64,000 bases of DNA, from assembly GCF_006345805.1 (NCBI RefSeq), contig NC_043007.1, positions 53,878,001-53,942,000 on the forward strand, written 5' to 3'. The notes below the pieces were generated by a model. That model did no database searches. It was not told the DNA's origin and worked only from the letters and a program-made list of their open reading frames with translations. This DNA comes from Octopus sinensis (taxonomy: Eukaryota). This document shows positions 35,991 to 49,795 of the stretch, piece after piece. The position numbers and the translations under genes were made by a program. The stretch's first letter is position 1. Each line of letters starts with the position of its first letter.

Positions 35991-36002
35991 TATATATATA
36001 TT

Positions 36003-36051
<49 letters not shown>

Positions 36052-36078
36052 ATATATATATTATATATTTATATATAT

Positions 36079-36113
<35 letters not shown>

Positions 36114-36207
36114 ATTTATATATATAATTATATATATATATATTTATATATATTTTATATATATATATATATATTATATATATATATTTATATAATATTT
36201 ATATATA

Positions 36208-36241
<34 letters not shown>

Positions 36242-36254
36242 TTTTGTATATATA

Positions 36255-36298
<44 letters not shown>

Positions 36299-36353
36299 TG
36301 TATATATATATTTATATATATATATATATTTATATATTTATATATATATATAT

Positions 36354-36384
<31 letters not shown>

Positions 36385-36399
36385 ATATATATTATATTA

Positions 36400-36445
<46 letters not shown>

Positions 36446-36448
36446 ATT

Positions 36449-36535
<87 letters not shown>

Positions 36536-36652
36536 ATTTATATATATAATATATATATTTATATATATATATATTATATATATATATATATATTTATATA
36601 TATTATTATATTTATATATTTATATATTTATATATTTATATATATATATATT

Positions 36653-36683
<31 letters not shown>

Positions 36684-36812
36684 ATATATTATATATATTT
36701 ATATACATATATACATATATATATATTTATATTCATATATAATATATATATTTATATTATTTATATATTATATTTTTTTATACATATATATATATATAAT
36801 ATATTAATATAT

Positions 36813-36850
<38 letters not shown>

Positions 36851-37571
36851 ATTTATATATATATATATATTTATATATACATATATATATATATGTATAC
36901 ATACATATATATATATATATGTATACATACATATATATATATATATATTTATATATACATATATATATATATATTTATATATACATTATATATATATATG
37001 TATACATACATATATATATATATATTATACATACATATATATATATATATATATTTATATATACATAATATATATATATTTATATATACATATATATATA
37101 TATATATTTATATATACATATATATATATATTTAATATACATATATATATATATATATTTATATATACATATATATATATTTATATATACATATATATAT
37201 ATATATTTATATATACATATAATATATATATATTTATATATACATATATATATATATATATTATATATACATATATATATATATATATTTATATATCATA
37301 TATATATATATATATCTATATATATATACATATATATATTTATATATACATATATTATATATTTATATATACATATATATATATATATTTATATATACAT
37401 ATATATATATATTTTATATATACATATATATATATATATTTATATATACATATATATATATATTTATATATACATATATATATATATTTATATATACATA
37501 TATATATATATTTATATATACATATATATATATATTTATATATACATATATATATATATATTTATATATAC
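35332..37571. repeat. 2.2-kb (AT)n-derived array; distal half is a TTTATATATACATATA(TA)n minisatellite
   Basis: Almost pure A/T, with periodic TTTA and TAC interruptions distally. Confidence 0.9.
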
Positions 37572-37810
37572 ATCATCATCATCATCATCGTTTAACGTCC
37601 GTTTTCCGCGCTAGCACGGGTTGGACGGTTTCGACCGGGGTCTGGGGAGCAAGGGACTGCCCCAGGCTCCAGTCTAGTCTGGCAGAGTTTCTACAGCTGG
37701 ATGCCCTTCCTAACGCCAACCACTCTCCGCGAGTGTAGTGGGTGTTTTTTACGTGCCACCTGCACAGGTGCCAGAGGGGTCTGGCATCGGCCACGTTCGG
37801 ATGGTGCTTT
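37572..37810 (-). mobile_element. RTE LINE 3' tail
   Basis: catcatcatcgtttaacgtccg..gatgcccttcctaacgccaaccac; resembles 39835-40090. Confidence 0.85.
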
Positions 37811-38068
37811 TTTTATGTGGGGGGGGGGTGCAGAAATATGGGGAGCACCAGTGGGGAGGGGTGGTTCAGAGAAATGATGACAGGTTCTAGGCAAGTAGAA
37901 CGTAGGATATCAAGAGAGGGGTAATGCATGGTGAAATAGCGTATTGAAGAGGGGGGTTCGAAGAGTAGACACCTATTATGGTGGTGGGAGAAGCGACATC
38001 CGGGATGGATGGAGCAAAAATATAGAGATATCCAGTATTGGTGTGGGGTGGGCAGGGCGGTGCACCGC

Positions 38069-39678
38069 GAATACACGATGGTTGATGAATACACGAGAGG
38101 CGAGATGGGTAATGGATAAATTAGTTAAAATAATTAGATAGATATAGAAATTAGTTAAAAATAGTTTGATAGATAAGAAAGCATGTATGATTGATGGGAA
38201 GTGAAATAATAAATAAGCATTCAACTTATCTTTTAGATGAATGAATGAATGAAAGAGCAGAAGTTTGGGGCTGCGTTTTTTTTTTTTAAATAAAGATTGT
38301 CCGGAGGAAGAAGGCGCGAATACACGATGGTTGATGAATACACGAGAGGCGAGATGGGTAATGGATAAATTAGTTAAAATAATTAGATAGATATAGAAAT
38401 TAGTTAAAAATAGTTAGATAGATAAGAAAGCATGTATGATTGATGGGAAGTGAATAATAAATAAGCATTCAACTTATCTGTTAGATGAATGAATGAATGA
38501 AAGAGCAGAAGTTTGGGGCTGCGTTTTTTTTTTTTAAATAAAGATTGTCCGGAGGAAGAAGGCGCGAATACACGATGGTCGATGAATACACGAGAGGCGA
38601 GATGGGTAATGGATAAATTAGTTAAAATAATTAGATAGATATAGAAATTAGTTAAAAATAGTTAGATAGATAAGAAAGCATGTATGATTGATGGGGAAGT
38701 GAAATAATAAATAAGCATTCAACTTATCTGTTAGATGAATGAATGAATGTAAGAGCAGAAGTTTGGGGCTGCGTTTTTTTTTTTTTAAATAAAGATTGTC
38801 CGGAGGAAGAAGGCGCGAATACACGATGGTTGATGAATACACGAGAGGCGAGATGGGTAATGGATAAATTAGTTAAAATAATTAGATAGATATAGAAATT
38901 AGTTAAAAATAGTTAGATAGATAGGAAAGCATGTATGATTGATGGGGAAGTGAAATAATAAATAAGCATTCAACTTATCTGTTAAATGGATGAATGAATG
39001 AAAGAGCAGAAGTTTGGGGCTGCGTTTTTTTTTTTTAAATAAAGATTATCCGGAGGAAGAAGGCGCGAATACACGATGGTTGATGAATACACGAGAGGCG
39101 AGATGGGTAATGGATAAATTAGTTAAAATAATTAGATAGATATAGAAATTAGTTTTAAAAATAGTTAGATAGATAAGAGCATGTATGATTGATGGGGAAG
39201 TGAAATAATAAATAAGCATTCAACTTATCTGTTAGATGAATGAATGAATGAAAGAGCAGAAGTTTGGGGCTGCGTTTTTTTTTTTTTTTAAATAAAGATT
39301 ATCCGGAGGAAGAAGGCGCGAATACACGATGGTTGATGAATACACGAGAGGCGAGATGGGTAATGGATAAATTAGTTAAAATAATTAGATAGATATAGAA
39401 ATTAGTTAAAAATAGTTAGATAGATAAGAAAGCATGTATGATTGATGGGGAAGTGAAATAATAAATAAGCATTCAACTTATCTGTTAGATGAATGAATGA
39501 ATGAAAGAGCAGAAGTTTGGGGCTGCGTTTTTTTTTTTTAAATAAAGATTGTCCGAGGAAGAAGGCGCGAATACACATGGTTGATGAATACACGAGAGGC
39601 GAGATGGGTAAGGGATAAATTAGTTAAAAAATTAGATAGATATAGAAATTAGTTAAAAAGAGTTAGATAGATAAGAAA
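38069..39678. repeat. Tandem array, about 250-bp unit, 6.4 copies
   Basis: Unit starts gaatacacgatgg at 38069, 38318, 38566, 38817, 39067, 39320, 39569; copies differ mainly in homopolymer length. Confidence 0.95.
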
Positions 39679-43184: not shown

Positions 43185-44275
43185 TATAATATAAATGCAT
43201 TTACAAAGCTAATGTTTATTATATACCAAACCAGGTATTGCCACCATTTATTACCCGGTCTACCAACTGGATAATAACTCATTTGGTTCAGCTGATCTAC
43301 ACCCCACCATGTACCTGTTAGATGGAACATTTATCTGCCTCTTATCTCTGTATGTGGTCCCTTGCAGATTTCCTTTCTGTTGTTGGATTATTTCACCTTT
43401 TTTTTTATATCCAACAGCAGCCCTTTACTACTAGCAATTACTGTAGCACACTTATACATTGTCTCAGCTTCTAAATCCACCACAAGTTTGACTGAACTAA
43501 AAAAATTGGGCAAAAAATAGTAATAGCCCTCTTTATGGTATGGAAATGATAAATTCCAGACCACATCTTACCCTAGGCCATGCTGACTAACATAATTGTC
43601 TCTTTTCTCAGTATAAAAACTAAACCCTCAGCAAATTTTCCAAATTTTGATCCCTCACTTCGTGGGCTTTCTGGGTATATACTATCAGAAGTGCGCCCTT
43701 CCTTTATACCCCACCATGCCCTTATCGACAGATAAGTATCTGTGAGAGTTGTAAAGTGTTTTGTATGCATTTCGAATGCTGTTAATGAGGGGGTCTTATC
43801 TTTATATATATAAAACTGAGAATGTGTGTCTGTGTGTTTCCCTAAAACTTGAGAACTACACAACCAATTTCATTCAAATTTTACACATGCCTTACTTAGG
43901 GTCCATGAAGTTTCATGGGCAAAAAAAAGTTCAACTTCTTGCCTAGAGCGAGCCCATAGCAATATCATATCTTCTCCACTATTTCAGTATTACGTGTTAA
44001 AAGTGAAACAAAAACATTTCTCTATTTTATATCAGATACTTTCACTTTAACAATAAAAATAATAATAACAATTAAATTATATGTAGTAAGTAATAATTAA
44101 AATCAAACTAAAGTATAATATAATGGTAACATAACAAAAGTAAAAATAGCAATTGGTATAAAATTGCATCAATGACTTGAACTTGAATAAGTGGTTTCAC
44201 ATGAATGGGAATAAATTAAAAATAAAATTAGCGTGCAGAAATGGAATAGTCCAGATGGATAATAAAAAATTAAAT

Positions 44276-44548
44276 TGTAGTATGAATGGTGAAAAGAGTA
44301 CAACAGAACAAGGAAGGAATGGAAATGTAATTGGGTCTTACCTGGTCGGAGATGAACTCGGATCGCCTTTAGCCAACTAGCTCGTGTCGCGTCTTCGTCG
44401 TGTCTGGTGCAACTGTTCGATGCCGCACGTGCGTTCTGTCTGTCACTTCCGCTTCCGTCGGCGCATGCGCCCTGCAAGACCTGCAAGACCTGCAAGCCCC
44501 ACTTCCGCTCTCCCCCATTCCGTCACACTCCTTCACCATCACACCACA
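44276..44548 (-). repeat. 3' LTR (273 bp)
   Basis: Differs from the 5' LTR by about 7 substitutions and one 9-bp duplication (manual count). Confidence 0.95.
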
Positions 44549-44584
44549 CGCCCTCCTGATCTATAGATCACTGAACCGGCTTCC

Positions 44585-47437
44585 TCACTCGCTCCCGTAC
44601 CTGAAACTGGTTTCATAATCAGCCAACCAGGGAGGAGGGTGCCGCTCCCTCTGTGGTCGCAGTATGACCCTAGGACTTGTTTCTGGTGTGTTGCTGCCGA
44701 CCTCGTCATCCTGTCTGTTGTTTTCATCTTGCCCATTGCTGCTTGTCCCATCCTCTGGGGCATGGACAATCCTCCGAATGTCCAAAACGTGGCGTGGCAT
44801 ACCATTGACCGAGATGTTATTCTTTGAATTTACAGAGGTTATTGTCCCCTTTCCCCATTGCGATGCACACCGTGCGTTTGGGGGTTTTACCCAGACTTCC
44901 TCCCCGACCTGCACGAAGGCGTGCTCTTCCTCTGCCCCGGGTCGCATTGATGTAGTACACGGATGCCTCCACTCGTACCTGAATATTGCCCTGTGTGGCA
45001 CCGACTCCTCAGCCTGTCCTGATCTGGGCGACATATTGTACCAAAACACGGCCTCGACTGGTGAAATGTGACCCCTCTCTGCCATGGCCTTGATGGTACG
45101 ATGATGCCTTTCCACCACCCCGTTTCCACTTGGCCGGTATGCCGCCCTGAAGAAGCGGTTGACCTTCCACTCATCAAGCATTTCTCTCAGCACATGCGAG
45201 CGAAACGCAGTGCCATTGTCCAGAAGCAGTTCATCCACGGGGCCTCGTTCCAGGAATATCTCATTCAACACTTTCACAATTTCTTCTGCGGTTCCCGACT
45301 TTATCTCCCTCCATATGGCGAACCGCCCCGGTCCGCAGTCAACCATTGAGAGGTATGTCCCCTGCCGGTAGTGTGTTATGTCCACCGCCAGTCGTCTCCA
45401 GTCCTGGTCCACTGGAATACTTCCCGCTTCATGCACGACCGGAGCAGGGTCAATGGACTGGCACCTGTCACAACTGCTAATCACTCTCTGCACGCTCCGT
45501 CTTGTTACATCAGAGTCAACTTTTCTGTCTAGGAACAATGTCCTGTCCACACCCATGTGATGCATGGTATGCAGTCTCCGCAACTCCGAGTCGCTCAGAC
45601 GGCATACTGCAGCTACATCCTGCTTCGCATCCTCTGGCACCTGCAACCAGGACGTCTGCCCTGTTCTTCTCGGAAGGCACAAAGATCACGCTCAGCTTCA
45701 GATTGAACTCAGTGGTTAGTTCACACAGTATTCCTAATCGACGCTTTACCAGCATCTCTGCAACCCCTTTGGTCCGCACCCTCCGCTCATCGGTGATGAC
45801 TGCTGTCGCCCAACCAAGTACAGTGGCTGAATCAGTCCTGATTTCTATGGTGTGCAACCCCCACTTCAAGGCTAGGTTCACCCCCTTCAGCACGGCTTCC
45901 AACTCCCCCACGTTGATATGATTGCAGTCATCCATCTTCCTGAGCCAGGCCGCATCTTCCACCGTGACACCTCCCACTTCCAAGACGACCCCTATTGCGA
46001 TGCTACTGGCGTCACACCATACGATCCCGCTCTTTGATTTGGGATTATACCAGCTGCCCCTCACCGGGTCCTCTGCTCCTACTCTGACCAAGACTTCCTG
46101 CATCATGTCGATTGTCCTCTCCCCCACTTTATCATTCCACTTCACTCCTTCGGCTCATCTCTTGATGAAGCTACATGCTGTCCGGAGCCAGCCTGCAATC
46201 GGGTAGTGTCCCACCAGCTTCCCACACACAGAGAACAGTTCCCGTCTACTCATGCTGGCGCCCAGTTCAGGGACCTCATTCCCTCGCCGGAACACCAAGG
46301 CGCCGGCCTTGTCTCTCCATAGCTTGAGGCCCAGTGCAGCACCTCCCTCCATAGCCTCTGGCGGCTTGGCGATCAGTCCAAAACTCTTCAGGGGCCTATG
46401 ACCTTCGTTGCTGGTATCACGGTTTCATCCACCAGAATGTCGTCGATGTATGAATTGGTGGCCCTTTTTACTCTGTCCACCTTCCCCAGGATGGCCTTGA
46501 GAATTGTTGCCATAATCTTCGGCGCTGAATTCAGCCCGAATCCCAACCTGGTCAGACAGTACGTCCGGCCCCTATACCTGACGAGCTGGTACTTCCATAT
46601 TTTCTCAGCCACATGCACCTGAAGGTATGCCGACTTTAAATCGACAATCGTGGAGGCCCCCGTCATCTGCCTCCACTCTCGCAAGGTGTCTCCGCAGACA
46701 TCCGTGGCCTCGCCGCCTGTATGACACGACACGTGGTCATTCAGTTCTCGGAAGTCGAGCACTGGCCTGACCTTACGCTTTGTGGGCTGTATCACCGCCA
46801 TCAGTGGCAGGACTCCGCTCTCTTCTTTTTCCCTGGGGATCAGTATGCCCTCCTTAATCCACCACTCCACCTCCCCCTCGAACTCACTTCTGGCATCTCC
46901 TTTTAGAGTATGCTGATAGCAGCCCACTTTATTCTTTAACATCGGGGGCTCTCCCTTCCAGTGCCACTCCACTGTCCACCTCTCGCCATCAAAGACAGCC
47001 CGAAAATCCTGGTCTTCAATGGTGTGCGCCGCATCCTTTTCCTCACGGTTGTTGTCGGTGCGCAAGCTCGCCCTACACGGCTTCCCCGCTAACCCAAACG
47101 TTACGCCAGCCTCGTTGACGGTGACACCTCCCAAACGGGTAATTGCATCCATCCCCATCACCACGTCGATCTCGTCCACCAAGTGACCAACCACAATTTC
47201 TCGCAACATCAGCTGTAGTCCCTGCACCACAATCTGCGCATCGGTAACCCCTTCGCAGTGCACTTCTCTTCCGTCAACTGCCCTAACACTGCTTCCTCCA
47301 CTCCACGTCTCTGCCACTTCTGTGGTCATCAGAGTCGTCGTACAGCCCGCGTCCACCAGGGCTCGCGACATCTTCCCCTTCACCAGAATGTCGACCACAG
47401 GTAACGATGATAAACGCGCCGCTACTAATCCAAAGGG
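44585..47437 (-). pseudogene. pol: Gypsy pol (protease, RT, RNase H, integrase), two frameshifts and one in-frame stop
   Basis: LVDAGC (protease motif altered), VLDFRELN, DLKSAY, FGLNSAP, YIDD, CDAS..ELEAV..TDS, HH-CC finger, AVD..LDNG..GVVER. Confidence 0.93.
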
Positions 47438-48180
47438 ATAACTACCGGTGCAGTAGTCTCCCGCGGTCCGTTTCCCCGCAGACACTCGCTGGCTACATGC
47501 CCTGGCTCTCGACACCGGTAGCAAACCACCTCTCGCTTGGGCGACGCGCAGTCGCGGACCATGTGTGGGCCTTGGCACCGGAAACACTGTCCTTTGAACG
47601 ATCGCACGCGTTCTTTCCTCAGCCCCTCTCCGTTGCTCCTAGCTGGGCCACTTTTCGACGTTACAGTCGCTGCTACCGACGTCAACCTGCTGCACGAAAC
47701 CAGTGCACATGCCCGCGATATGATATCGGCCATCGGCATCGAACGCACGTTCGGGAGCTTCTGTAGCTCGACCGACATGATGTCAGGAAAGCCGGTCACG
47801 AACACTAACCTAACCGTCCGTTCTAGCGACTCTCCCTCATATCCCGCCAGTTTAGCCAACCTTCTAAGCTCACCGGCGAACACGTCCACCTGTTGTCCGG
47901 TCCATCTCATTCTACCCAGCCGAGCGTACGCTTCAAATATTCCTTCCGCGAAGGGCTCCATAAGTCAGATCTCCACTTTATCTTCGCTGAGTTGGTCCGT
48001 CTCCTCCATCTCTAAATATAACGCCAAGGCCGGGCCATCCAAATACAACGGCATAAAACTAGCCAGGTCAGCTATACCGTGGAGCTTCGCCACCAACTTT
48101 ACCCTCTTCAACCAAGCGACCACATCGGTGTCGCCGCAAAACGGTGTTATAGGCTCGCGTGAAACCATAGCACTCTGCAT
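47425..48180 (-). pseudogene. gag: Gypsy gag with two zinc knuckles; one in-frame TGA
   Basis: ORFs 47965-48180 and 47425-47961 are in frame across TGA; knuckles CFRCQGPHMVRDC and CYRCREPGHVASEC. Confidence 0.9.
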
Positions 48181-48240
48181 AATTTTCTATTTTTATTTTT
48201 ACAAAACCGAGTGATTATTTGCCGGTCCCAGTGATTATTT

Positions 48241-48252
48241 GCCGAAATAGCT
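48241..48252 (-). other. Non-canonical primer-binding site AGCTATTTCGGC
   Basis: Abuts the 5' LTR. The plus strand reads GCCGAAATAGCT, equal to nt 1-12 of human/Drosophila tRNA-Phe(GAA) as recalled from memory. Confidence 0.75.
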
Positions 48253-48516
48253 TGTAGTATGAATGATGAAAAGCGTACAACAGAACAAGGAAGGAATGGA
48301 AATGTAATTGGGTCTTACCTGGTCGGAGATGAACTCGGATCGCCTTTAGCCAACTAGCTTGTGTCGCGTCTTCGTTGTGTCTGGTGCAACTGGTCGATGC
48401 CACACGTGCGTTCTGTCTGTCACTTCCGCTTCCGTCGGCGCATGCGCCCTGCAGGACCTGCAAGCCCCACTTCCGCTCTCCCCCATTCCGTCACACTCCT
48501 TCACCATCACACCACA
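48253..48516 (-). repeat. 5' LTR (264 bp)
   Basis: TGTGGTGTGA..CATACTACA on the minus strand. Confidence 0.95.
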
Positions 48517-49795
48517 TAAATTAAAGAAAAGACTATTGTCTATAAAGTATACAATGTAGAGAAAAAAGAAGATTTGAACACATGGAGGAAAGCACCTTCG
48601 AAAAGTGTCTTGGTGCGACTATGAAAGATATCTAATCAGAGGCGGTAAATTCGCCACAATAGAAGCAAAGTTCGAGTCAATGGAGCGTGCAAGGGAGTAC
48701 TCGACTCAAACTTGCAAAGTGGAAATATTTTATTTTTATTTTATATCTTGGACGTAGGACGTCCCGGAAAAAAATTTTTAATGCAGAACCCCCCCCCCCC
48801 CTCGCCCCACGAAGTAGAGGTAGGCTGGATTGTAGCCACACTTCTATACAAGAGGGAGGACAAGATACAATTGATCGAAATTACAAGAGACGGGCTAACA
48901 GTTCCAGTCTGTTATATATTTTGAGTATTGTTATCACTAGCGATATCAAAATATAATTTTGTATTTTATGTGTAGATGTATATATATAGATGTACATGTA
49001 ATATGTACACATATATATACACATATATACATGCTCTAGCACTATGACCTGGCAACGACGGGTCTTTAATGCTAGTTTTAAATTAGCGATCAAAGTTTGG
49101 TTCTCCATATACTGGGGTACTGCTAGTGTCTCTTACATGTAAATACTGGTTCAATTTCACGAATCGTGTTTGTGACATAATACTGGAATTGTACTTATCT
49201 CCAAAAGGTTCCTGATTGCTCCTGTTATTTGTAACCCTGGGTCTTACACCCATAATAATATTTATGGCAAAAAATGCCTGTATTTCTTCTATGGTTGTGG
49301 GAAACCACAAGCTATCTTTTTTCCAATTTTGTTTATATTCTGCGTAATGGTTTGTTTCTGCAGTGATGGCTTCAAACAAGCTTACTGGAAAAAATAAGAA
49401 AATAAAAATATCTAACAGTTTCGCTTCCTGAGAAAGACTAGGAGTAGACCCTGTCTCCTCAGAAACATTGTTAATAAAAATATTATTTTTTAACTTTGTA
49501 CTCCATTCTGGTGTAAAATTGTCCTCACTGTCACTATCACCACTTTTAGTTTCAGAATTGCTTTCAGTTTCGGATAGAGAAATATCCAATTCATTCTCAA
49601 ATATCACATGCTTTTGTACTTCACTCATTCTTTTTCTACTTATCTCCATATTTTCTGTTGAAAAGCCCTCAAATTCAGAATCAATCAACCAACAAAGCAA
49701 AAACAATTAGTAATGTCAACAGTGCTGAAATGAATAACAAACCTAAATGCAACTTCAAAGACTAAAGCTTCTGTCACTTAGAAGGAAATTGTTTA

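What the first reader, a model, noticed from the sequence alone, without database searches (positions are those of the whole stretch)
48208..48260. Gypsy element whose primer-binding site is complementary to the 5' end (nt 1-12) of tRNA-Phe
Seen: directly after the CA of the 5' LTR the element strand reads AGCTATTTCGGC, with no TGG, then a 15-bp direct repeat (48210-48224 and 48230-48244). The plus strand (48241-48252) reads GCCGAAATAGCT. Known: this equals, from memory, nt 1-12 of human/Drosophila tRNA-Phe(GAA). Normal PBSs pair with the tRNA 3' CCA end (that would be TGGTGCCGAAAC), and the known exceptions use anticodon-half tRNAiMet (copia, Ty5) or self-priming (Tf1). Inference: a 12/12 match exactly at the LTR edge is unlikely by chance and suggests priming by a very short 5' tRNA fragment, or cleavage of tRNA-Phe in the D-stem after annealing. 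I do not recall this mode being described, but I cannot check the literature.
Basis: partly seen in the sequence, partly recalled or inferred. Interest (0 to 1): 0.85.

Follow-up and report, generated by a model that had tools for sequence, protein, structure and literature searches.

The report
Retrotransposon primed by tRNA-Phe's 5' end
A small, decayed LTR retrotransposon in this (octopus-like) genome, and its many relatives in molluscs, crustaceans and marine plankton, carry just after the left repeat a conserved 12-base site complementary to the first 12 bases of phenylalanine tRNA rather than its last bases, which points to a way of starting DNA copying that I could not find described.

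Summary
A 4,241-bp LTR retroelement lies on the minus strand at 44276-48516, with TG..CA LTRs and a 5-bp ATTTA target duplication. Directly after the 5' LTR it reads AGCTATTTCGGC (48252..48241). This is the exact complement of GCCGAAATAGCT, nt 1-12 of human tRNA-Phe(GAA), which I checked against a published primer sequence.

It is not a chance match. In 10 independent relatives with unrelated LTRs and leaders, the same 12 positions follow the LTR-terminal (A)CA. These come from a sea slug, a barnacle, a mantis shrimp and marine metagenomes. Conservation stops exactly at both edges of the 12-mer. In one relative the gag ATG follows the 12-mer directly, so there is no room for another primer site.

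Two versions exist: GCCGAAATAGCT, and GCCTAGATAGCT in malacostracans and plankton. In viral contigs the second version occurs at the 5' end of tRNA genes, and only of tRNA-Phe genes.

No LTR holds a Tf1-type self-primer, and there is no canonical TGG site.

Best explanation: tRNA-Phe pairs through nt 1-12 and is cut after U12 to give the primer. The pairing site is well supported; the cut is inferred. The copy in the window is old and broken. The "Gypsy" label is consistent but unproven. I found no prior description, so I rate it a new variant of a known kind.

The parts
48517..48521 (-). Target-site duplication ATTTA, upstream copy
   Evidence: Same 5 nt flank the 3' LTR at 44271-44275.
48253..48516 (-). 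5' LTR (264 nt), TGTGGT...ACTACA
   Evidence: About 94% identical to the 3' LTR. The alignment ends exactly at ...ACTACA.
48241..48252 (-). Minus-strand primer-binding site AGCTATTTCGGC, complementary to tRNA-Phe nt 1-12
   Evidence: The same 12-mer sits at the LTR edge in L009, L010, L011, L039 and L040. The variant AGCTATCTAGGC sits there in L002-L008 and L012.
48205..48244 (-). Copy-specific 20-bp tandem duplication (CGGCAAATAATCACTGGGAC / CGGCAAATAATCACTCGGTT).
   Evidence: Absent from the Octopus sinensis relative L001 and from all other relatives.
47425..48180 (-). gag with a CCHC zinc knuckle, broken by an in-frame stop at 47965-47967
   Evidence: ORFs of 71 aa and 178 aa in one frame. 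zf-CCHC hit. 81% identical to an Octopus sinensis protein.
46388..47587 (-). pol piece 1: aspartic protease and reverse transcriptase (YIDD), in a different frame from gag
   Evidence: RVT_1, gag-asp_proteas. 47-48% identical to metagenomic relatives.
46155..46352 (-). pol piece 2: RT thumb-like DUF7047. It follows a frame change and ends at an in-frame stop at 46155-46157.
   Evidence: PF23088 E=9e-17. It is a three-helix segment between RT and RNase H in the model of P0012.
45516..46145 (-). pol piece 3: RNase H
   Evidence: RVT_3 and RNase_H hits.
44585..45682 (-). pol piece 4: integrase (365-aa ORF, frame change relative to the RNase H piece)
   Evidence: rve hit. 240 homologues at E<=1e-20 in molluscs, crustaceans and metagenomes.
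44551..44569 (-). Near-palindrome GATCTATAGATC followed by polypurine tract AGGAGGG, 2 nt before the 3' LTR
   Evidence: Motif GATCnnnnGATC-AGRGGGRG is conserved before the 3' LTR in L001, L002-L005, L011, L042 and L043.
44276..44548 (-). 3' LTR (273 nt, with a 9-nt insertion relative to the 5' LTR)
44271..44275 (-). Target-site duplication ATTTA, downstream copy

Best explanation
The 12-mer AGCUAUUUCGGC, directly 3' of U5, is the element's only minus-strand primer-binding site. It pairs with nt 1-12 of cytoplasmic tRNA-Phe: the 5' strand of the acceptor stem, U8, A9 and the first three bases of the D-stem. A 5' end cannot be extended, so the tRNA must present a 3'-OH at U12. The most likely route is that the tRNA anneals, helped by the CCHC nucleocapsid, and is then cut between U12 and C13 at the end of the RNA:RNA duplex. 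The conserved, non-complementary ACA at the end of U5 defines that duplex end. The cut would be made by the element's own RNase H, which is the Tf1 reaction carried out in trans on a tRNA. Alternatively, a host nuclease supplies a ready-made 12-nt 5' fragment. The 12-nt RNA then primes minus-strand strong-stop DNA. Plus-strand synthesis copies the primer to its physical 5' end, which explains why the conserved block is exactly 12 nt long. Shown: the position, the complementarity, the conservation and its exact limits, and the absence of alternatives. Inferred: that tRNA-Phe itself is the primer, where it is cut, and what cuts it. The window's copy is an old, inactive member of the family.
For: (1) LTR edge and target duplication are fixed.
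(2) The 12/12 complement to tRNA-Phe nt 1-12 was verified against PMC10505166.
(3) The same 12-mer follows the LTR-terminal ACA in Plakobranchus ocellatus (L011, LTRs 98.7% identical), Amphibalanus amphitrite (L040, 99%), L009, L010 and L039 (LTRs 100%). RT identity among these is only about 40-60%, and their LTRs and leaders are unalignable.
(4) Column profile over 10 independent elements: positions -3..-1 are ACA in 9-10 of 10; 10 of the 12 PBS positions are 10/10; from +13 onwards identity is 5-6 of 10 or less.
(5) The space between LTR and gag ATG is only 12-40 nt in the relatives. In L010 the ATG abuts the 12-mer.
(6) A second variant, AGCTATCTAGGC, is found in Oratosquilla oratoria (L012), in three unrelated metagenomic LTR families (L002/3, L004-7, L008), and at 10/12 in an old Palaemon copy (L043). 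Its complement plus CAG has 25 matches in IMG/VR. ARAGORN places 11 of these at the 5' end of a tRNA gene, all 11 tRNA-Phe(GAA). Sequence reading suggests a 12th, also Phe-like. One, L032, is a eukaryote-type tRNA-Phe.
(7) The two variants differ only at acceptor-stem positions 4 and 6. Cross-pairing costs 6-10 kcal/mol (-18.7 and -20.0 versus -10.4 and -12.8).
(8) No complement of the PBS beyond chance is found in any 5' LTR, nor anywhere in the window.
(9) Precedent for the chemistry: Tf1 RNase H cleaves an RNA duplex to make its primer (Levin 1996, cited in PMC4600332). Half-tRNA primers are an accepted class (PMC6317226).
Against: - No tRNA-Phe gene of an octopus, sea slug, barnacle or malacostracan could be read. 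No eukaryotic genome collection is searchable by DNA here, and there is no tRNA in the window. The host match is therefore extrapolated from human tRNA-Phe. The GCCUAGA variant is only shown to be a tRNA-Phe type of 5' end elsewhere.
- Nothing shows that a 12-nt fragment exists or that the cut is made.
- The first two PBS bases (AG) could in principle be conserved as integrase-processed U5 end bases, which would make the paired primer 10 nt.
- L038 has one mismatch (AGCTATTCCGGC) despite identical LTRs.
- Two old copies have 10/12 (L001, L043), though this is compatible with their 11-13% LTR decay.
- The RT tree does not resolve whether PBS variant follows host or element lineage.
Confidence: 0.7

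Rival explanations
1. The primer is a different host small RNA whose 3' end reads ...GCCGAAAUAGCU-3'OH. It could be a processed tRNA-Phe-derived or SINE-derived transcript, or a stable 5' tRF made for other reasons. The element never handles full-length tRNA-Phe.
For: The data only show what sequence pairs with the site. Short 5' tRNA fragments are known cell products (background knowledge). This model needs no special nuclease activity from the element.
Against: Common 5' tRFs end in the D-loop at 14-16 nt or more, and their extra bases (C13 A14 G15) would not pair with the conserved ACA of U5. No such 12-nt species has been documented, and none could be searched for here. In substance this is a sub-case of the main model.
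Confidence: 0.15
2. Tf1/sushi-type self-priming: a stretch of the element's own transcript folds back on the 12-mer and is cleaved to give the primer. The likeness to tRNA-Phe would then be mimicry or coincidence.
For: The PBS is short (12 nt versus 11 in Tf1) and lacks TGG, as in self-primed elements (PMC4600332, PMC6317226).
Against: In 12 loci the best match to the PBS complement within 223-450 nt upstream is 7-9 of 12. That is no better than shuffles for all but two of the elements (L002/L003 and L039), and even there 6-14% of shuffles do as well. It also falls at inconsistent positions. In the window no second copy exists on either strand, even with 1 mismatch. LTRs are unrelated between elements while the 12-mer is constant, which is the opposite of what co-evolving self-primer/PBS pairs show.
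Confidence: 0.03
3. The 12-mer is a conserved cis signal for something other than priming, such as packaging, dimerisation, translation start context or integrase end recognition. Reverse transcription would be primed elsewhere or by another mechanism.
For: It lies next to the gag start codon and the LTR end, where such signals often sit.
Against: There is no other conserved sequence and almost no space between LTR and gag (0-28 nt after the 12-mer in the relatives). The LTR/internal boundary is by definition where the minus-strand primer's 3' end sits. Both variants correspond to tRNA-Phe 5' ends, which a non-pairing signal would not require.
Confidence: 0.05
4. The match in the window is a chance 12/12 hit at a decayed locus.
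For: The copy is old (LTRs 94% identical) and its genes are broken.
Against: Chance expectation for any of about 45 tRNA 5' ends at one fixed position is of the order of 1e-6. The 12-mer recurs at the same position in independent elements from at least five named species.
Confidence: 0.01

Closest known systems
Half-tRNA priming of Ty1/copia-type elements (copia, Ty5, Tca2/pCal; plant Osser, Bianca)
   Same: The primer is a 5' fragment of a cellular tRNA that must be made by cleavage. The PBS does not start with TGG and is short. This is an accepted third class of primer (PMC6317226; PMC10886601).
   Different: There the PBS pairs with the segment ending in the anticodon stem-loop, giving a fragment of about 39 nt, usually of tRNA-iMet, Ile, Arg, Tyr or Asp. 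Here it pairs with nt 1-12, including the acceptor stem, of tRNA-Phe. Here the element has PR-RT-RH-IN order, not the copia order.
Tf1/sushi self-priming
   Same: An 11-12-nt PBS abuts U5. The primer's 3' end is created by a cut at the end of an RNA:RNA duplex, and in Tf1 the element's RNase H makes that cut (Levin 1996, as cited in PMC4600332).
   Different: In Tf1 the primer is the 5' end of the element's own mRNA, encoded in the LTR. Here no LTR contains the complement, and the pairing partner has the sequence of a host tRNA.
Canonical tRNA-Phe-primed retroelements (e.g. mouse IAP/IAPE)
   Same: The same tRNA species is implicated (PMC7472051).
   Different: Those use an 18-nt PBS complementary to the 3' CCA end. 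Here the opposite strand of the acceptor stem is targeted and the CCA end is not involved.
Divergent mollusc 'Gypsy' clades (Cigr-1, MolGy1-16) of Thomas-Bulle et al. 2018
   Same: LTR elements of molluscs that do not fall in the classical Gypsy clades. Some are also present in other phyla (PMC6238403).
   Different: I could not obtain reference sequences, so membership was not tested. That paper does not treat primer-binding sites (0 occurrences of PBS).

Membership tests
LTR retrotransposon (Ortervirales-type) | Two direct LTRs with TG...CA ends, flanked by a short target-site duplication | tested here: met
   LTRs 48253-48516 and 44276-44548, about 94% identical, TGTGGT...ACTACA; TSD ATTTA.
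LTR retrotransposon (Ortervirales-type) | gag plus pol with protease, RT, RNase H and integrase; polypurine tract before the 3' LTR | tested here: met
   zf-CCHC, gag-asp_proteas, RVT_1, RNase_H/RVT_3 and rve hits. PPT AGGAGGG at 44551-44557. The genes are broken in this copy.
Ty3/Gypsy (Metaviridae) | Domain order PR-RT-RH-IN | tested here: met
   Order of Pfam hits along the element and along intact relatives.
Ty3/Gypsy (Metaviridae) | RT/RH/IN cluster with Ty3/gypsy references rather than BEL/Pao or retroviruses | tested here: inconclusive
   No hit to RT_RNaseH/RT_RNaseH_2. Integrase_H2C2 hits at or just above its cut-off in L010. The family profile against PDB gives retroviral IN and RT first and no Ty3 among the best 60. 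Fold searches give retroviral and caulimovirid PR-RT. The model shows one RNase H directly after a three-helix thumb, as in Ty3-like rather than retroviral RTs. No BEL/Pao Pfam families hit. No reference tree could be built.
Canonical 3'-end tRNA priming | PBS beginning TGG within a few nt of U5, complementary to the tRNA 3' CCA end | tested here: not met
   Sequence after CA is AGCTATTTCGGC. No conserved TGG in any relative.
Half-tRNA (anticodon-arm) priming | PBS complementary to the tRNA segment ending in the anticodon stem-loop | tested here: not met
   The complement is nt 1-12 of tRNA-Phe. The conserved block ends where the tRNA 5' end ends.
Tf1/sushi self-priming | PBS complementary to a sequence in the 5' LTR (start of the transcript) | tested here: not met
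   Best LTR matches are 7-9 of 12, little or no better than shuffles. No second match in the window.
tRNA-Phe 5'-end priming (proposed here) | 12-mer at the U5 edge complementary to nt 1-12 of the host's own tRNA-Phe | not testable with these tools
   Complementarity is shown to human tRNA-Phe, and for the variant to tRNA-Phe genes in viral contigs. No tRNA-Phe was found in any fetched locus.
tRNA-Phe 5'-end priming (proposed here) | Primer with a 3'-OH at U12 attached to minus-strand strong-stop DNA | not testable with these tools
   Needs wet-lab mapping.

The most novel reading that the evidence does not exclude
A large, old clade of very compact (3.7-4.3 kb) LTR retroelements of marine invertebrates starts reverse transcription in a fourth way. 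It invades the acceptor stem of tRNA-Phe, pairs with nt 1-12 and cuts the tRNA in the D-stem to release a 12-nt primer. The PBS tracks lineage-specific changes in the tRNA-Phe acceptor stem (GCCGAAA versus GCCUAGA).
Probability: 0.5. Interest if true: 0.8.

Novelty: new variant of a known kind. Interest (0 to 1): 0.72.

Why it matters
Textbooks and recent surveys list three ways in which LTR retroelements obtain their minus-strand primer: the 3' end of a whole tRNA, a half-tRNA cut in the anticodon arm, and a self-primer (PMC6317226; PMC10886601). A conserved PBS for the first 12 nt of tRNA-Phe would add a fourth way.

It would also matter in four practical respects.
- It implies a nuclease activity that cuts a tRNA in the D-stem, probably the element's RNase H acting on an RNA:RNA duplex as in Tf1, but in trans.
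- Standard annotation tools look for complements of tRNA 3' ends, so they would report 'no PBS' for this whole clade.
- Small-RNA defence models based on 3' CCA tRNA fragments that target the PBS would not apply to this clade. Here it is the tRNA's 3' acceptor strand that has the same sense as the PBS.
- The family is abundant: at least 268 gag clusters at 50% identity with E<=1e-30. It has young copies with identical LTRs, so the idea is directly testable.

Tried and rejected
- **Self-priming:** I scanned 223-450 nt upstream of the PBS in 12 loci for its complement. Nothing clearly exceeded shuffles.
- **Canonical PBS:** there is no TGG at the LTR edge, and no conserved TGG downstream in any relative.
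- **Other copies in the window:** none.
- **tRNA genes:** none in the window, and no tRNA-Phe in any related locus.
- **Uninformative loci:** the cuttlefish copy L042 has lost the LTR end, PBS, gag and PR by deletion. The amphipod locus L041 holds only the RH-IN part. L001 and L043 are old, internally deleted copies with 10/12 matches.
- **Empty scans:** The search for related loci found no relatives in viral contigs or genome contigs.
- **RT tree:** it was meant to ask whether PBS variant follows host or element. The backbone is unresolved and one clade for the variant is not rejected (p-AU 0.07). The very long L038/L039 branch is probably an alignment artefact, because full-length proteins were used for those two.
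- **Superfamily placement:** PDB profile search, AlphaFold model and two Foldseek searches returned generic retroviral or caulimovirid PR-RT matches, which do not discriminate.
- **Odin retrotransposons:** considered, but they are reported only in sea anemones and have a dual RNase H. The model here shows a single RNase H.
- **Literature:** ten full-text searches (tRNA-Phe with PBS, self-priming, atypical PBS, 'first 12 nucleotides', the two 12-mers as strings, Cigr-1, Odin) found no description of a PBS for a tRNA 5' end. Subscription-journal papers, including the original Cigr-1, Tf1 and BEL papers, were not readable.

Full report
**What is in the window**

The finding lies at the inner edge of the 5' LTR of an LTR retroelement on the minus strand.
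- Direct-repeat search and pairwise alignment give two LTRs, 48516..48253 (264 nt) and 44548..44276 (273 nt). They are about 94% identical and differ by a 9-nt insertion.
- On the element strand both LTRs run TGTGGT...CATACTACA. The alignment stops exactly after that final CA.
- The outer flanks are both ATTTA (48521-48517 and 44275-44271), a 5-bp target-site duplication. The LTR edge is therefore fixed independently of any idea about the primer site.
- The element is 4,241 bp long (44276-48516).

**State of the coding regions**

- gag has a CCHC knuckle and runs 48180-47425. It is interrupted by an in-frame stop at 47967-47965.
- pol survives in four pieces:
  - protease-RT, 47587-46388;
  - after a frame change, a DUF7047 piece, 46352-46155, ended by an in-frame stop;
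  - RNase H, 46145-45516;
  - after another frame change, integrase, 45682-44585.
- With 6% LTR divergence, this is an old, dead copy.
- No other copy and no tRNA gene lies in the 64 kb.
- The gag protein is 81% identical to an Octopus sinensis protein, so the window is most likely cephalopod DNA.

**The observation**

- Directly after the LTR's CA (48254-48253) the element strand reads AGCTATTTCGGC (48252..48241). The plus strand reads GCCGAAATAGCT.
- A primer printed in PMC10505166 gives human tRNA-Phe(GAA) as GCCGAAATAGCTCAGTTGGGAG. The site is therefore a 12/12 complement of nt 1-12: acceptor-stem 5' strand G1-A7, U8, A9 and G10-U12 of the D-stem.
- There is no TGG at the edge.
They belong to a 20-bp tandem duplication (48244..48205, 17/20) that begins in the last four bases of the 12-mer. 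None of the relatives has it, so I treat it as a copy-specific slip.

**Is it more than chance?**

I collected relatives through the gag, RT and integrase proteins and fetched their DNA.

The family is large. At least 268 gag clusters at 50% identity score E<=1e-30 among 1.84 billion representatives. Named hosts are molluscs (Octopus, Acanthosepion, Aplysia, Plakobranchus) and crustaceans (Oratosquilla, Palaemon, Penaeus, Portunus, Trinorchestia, Amphibalanus). There are also many marine metagenome contigs, including Tara Oceans.

Where both LTRs are present, the LTR end can be read off directly:

| Locus | Source | LTR identity | Sequence at the LTR edge |
|---|---|---|---|
| L011 | Plakobranchus ocellatus | 98.7% | ...ACTACTACA \| AGCTATTTCGGC |
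| L040 | Amphibalanus amphitrite | 99% | ...TCGCTACA \| AGCTATTTCGGC |
| L039 | marine assembly | 100% | ...GACTACA \| AGCTATTTCGGC |
| L038 | same sample as L039 | 100% | AGCTATTCCGGC (one mismatch) |
| L012 | Oratosquilla oratoria | 97% | ...AATCACA \| AGCTATCTAGGC |

- Metagenomic L009 and L010 carry AGCTATTTCGGC after ...AACA.
- Three metagenomic families with mutually unrelated LTRs (L002/3, L004-7, L008) carry AGCTATCTAGGC.
- Two old, internally deleted copies match at 10 of 12. These are Octopus sinensis L001 (LTRs about 87% identical) and Palaemon L043 (89%). That is what their decay predicts.

Over ten independent elements the column profile is as follows:
- ACA at positions -3..-1 in 9-10 of 10;
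- 10/10 identity at ten of the twelve PBS positions;
- a clean two-state split, 6 versus 4, at the other two positions;
- no column above 6/10 from position +13 onward.

The conserved block thus begins at the LTR edge and ends exactly where the tRNA's 5' end would end.

In the relatives the distance from the LTR to the gag ATG is only 12-40 nt. In L010 the ATG follows the 12-mer directly. No room is left for any other primer site.

**The second variant**

- GCCTAGATAGCT differs from GCCGAAATAGCT only at acceptor-stem positions 4 and 6.
- Each PBS pairs well with its own partner (-18.7 and -20.0 kcal/mol) and poorly with the other (-10.4 and -12.8). The variants are therefore functionally distinct.
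- I could not read a crustacean tRNA-Phe gene.
- As an indirect test I searched IMG/VR for GCCTAGATAGCTCAG.
  - There were 25 matches. ARAGORN places 11 at the very 5' end of a tRNA gene, and all 11 are tRNA-Phe(GAA); none is any other tRNA.
  - L020 also reads like a Phe-type tRNA with a GAA anticodon in sequence, although ARAGORN did not call it.
  - One match, L032, has a eukaryote-type body (GCCTAGATAGCTCAGTTGGGAGAGCGTCAGACTGAAGATCTGAAGGTCC...TTTAGGCA, no encoded CCA).
- Both PBS variants therefore correspond to tRNA-Phe 5' ends.
- The variant is seen in the two malacostracans sampled and in plankton contigs. The barnacle and the molluscs have the human-type sequence.
- An RT tree could not resolve whether the variant arose once or follows the host.

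**Alternatives tested**

- Tf1-type self-priming predicts a complement of the PBS in the LTR. The best matches in 12 loci are 7-9 of 12, at inconsistent places. They are no better than shuffles except marginally in L002/L003 and L039, where 6-14% of shuffles do as well. The window has no second match on either strand.
- A canonical or anticodon-arm PBS is absent.
- A non-priming signal is unlikely. The U5/internal boundary is where the primer's 3' end sits, and both variants are tRNA-Phe sequences.

**Mechanism (inferred)**

- The base that pairs with the first PBS nucleotide is U12, so the primer must have its 3'-OH at U12.
- Bases 13-15 of the tRNA (C, A, G) cannot pair with the conserved ACA of U5. 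The duplex therefore ends exactly there.
- The closest precedent for making a primer end at a duplex end is Tf1. Its RNase H cuts an RNA:RNA duplex after nt 11 of the self-primer (Levin 1996, cited in PMC4600332).
- The closest precedent for using a 5' tRNA fragment is the half-tRNA class (PMC6317226).
- I therefore favour annealing of tRNA-Phe, with opening of the acceptor and D stems by the CCHC nucleocapsid. The element's RNase H would then cut at U12/C13.
- A host-made 12-nt fragment is the main alternative.
- A primer that ends at the tRNA's physical 5' end also explains why exactly 12 nt are regenerated and conserved.

**What kind of element it is**

- The domain order is PR-RT-RH-IN, and intact relatives encode one gag-pol ORF of about 1,160-1,230 aa in only 3.7-4.3 kb.
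- Pfam finds RVT_1, DUF7047, RNase_H/RVT_3, Integrase_H2C2 (at or just above its cut-off in L010) and rve. It does not find the usual Ty3/gypsy RT_RNaseH families or any BEL/Pao family.
- A family profile against PDB puts retroviral integrases and RTs first.
- In an AlphaFold model of P0012 (mean pLDDT 70.5, RT-RH region 80-92), DUF7047 is a three-helix thumb followed directly by a single RNase H.
- Foldseek returns retroviral, foamy and caulimovirid PR-RT.
- 'Gypsy-like order, divergent clade' is as far as the evidence goes. It may be one of the unplaced mollusc clades of PMC6238403.

**Novelty**

Recent surveys list only three primer types. Ten full-text searches found no PBS for a tRNA 5' end. 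Older subscription papers could not be read, so prior mention cannot be excluded. I rate it a new variant of a known kind (tRNA-fragment priming), well supported at the sequence level and untested biochemically.

Noticed in passing
window 44551-44569; also L001 7619, L002 4006, L003 19, L004 454, L005 375, L011 8744, L042 7060, L043 7085: A near-palindromic 12-mer (GATCTTGAGATC; GATCTATAGATC in the window) fused to the polypurine tract AGRGGGRG lies 0-2 nt before the 3' LTR. It is conserved across elements whose LTRs are unrelated. It may be a recognition element for plus-strand primer selection.
   Followed up: partly
L003 1-330, L004 454-1225, L005 375-1150: Several metagenome contigs of about element length read ...integrase end-PPT-LTR-PBS-gag, a single LTR joining the 3' and 5' ends. 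This could be assembler wrap-around of the two LTRs, tandem copies or 1-LTR circles. I could not tell which.
   Followed up: no
L012 3095-3167 (minus): A tRNA-Val(CAC) gene lies about 196 bp upstream of the 5' LTR of the Oratosquilla copy. No tRNA gene is near the other copies, so it is probably coincidence rather than Pol III targeting.
   Followed up: partly
L038 5967-5978: A copy with 100% identical LTRs has a single mismatch in the PBS (AGCTATTCCGGC), while its sister L039 is perfect. If not a post-insertion mutation, it bears on whether the PBS is inherited from the template or copied from the primer.
   Followed up: no
window 36000-37700 and 37956-39506: A long array of short (about 8-14-bp period) repeats is followed by a roughly 250-bp satellite with six units at 81-94% identity. 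Both lie upstream of the element and are unrelated to it.
   Followed up: no
L010 2619-2695; window 45516-45682: Both the window copy and L010 change reading frame at the RNase H/integrase junction with overlapping ORFs, whereas many relatives have one continuous gag-pol ORF. These could be independent mutations or a recoding site in some lineages.
   Followed up: no
proteins P0158, P0200: Two integrase/RT fragments of this eukaryotic retroelement family are deposited as proteins of Bacteroidota metagenome-assembled genomes. They are almost certainly host-DNA contamination of the bins.
   Followed up: no
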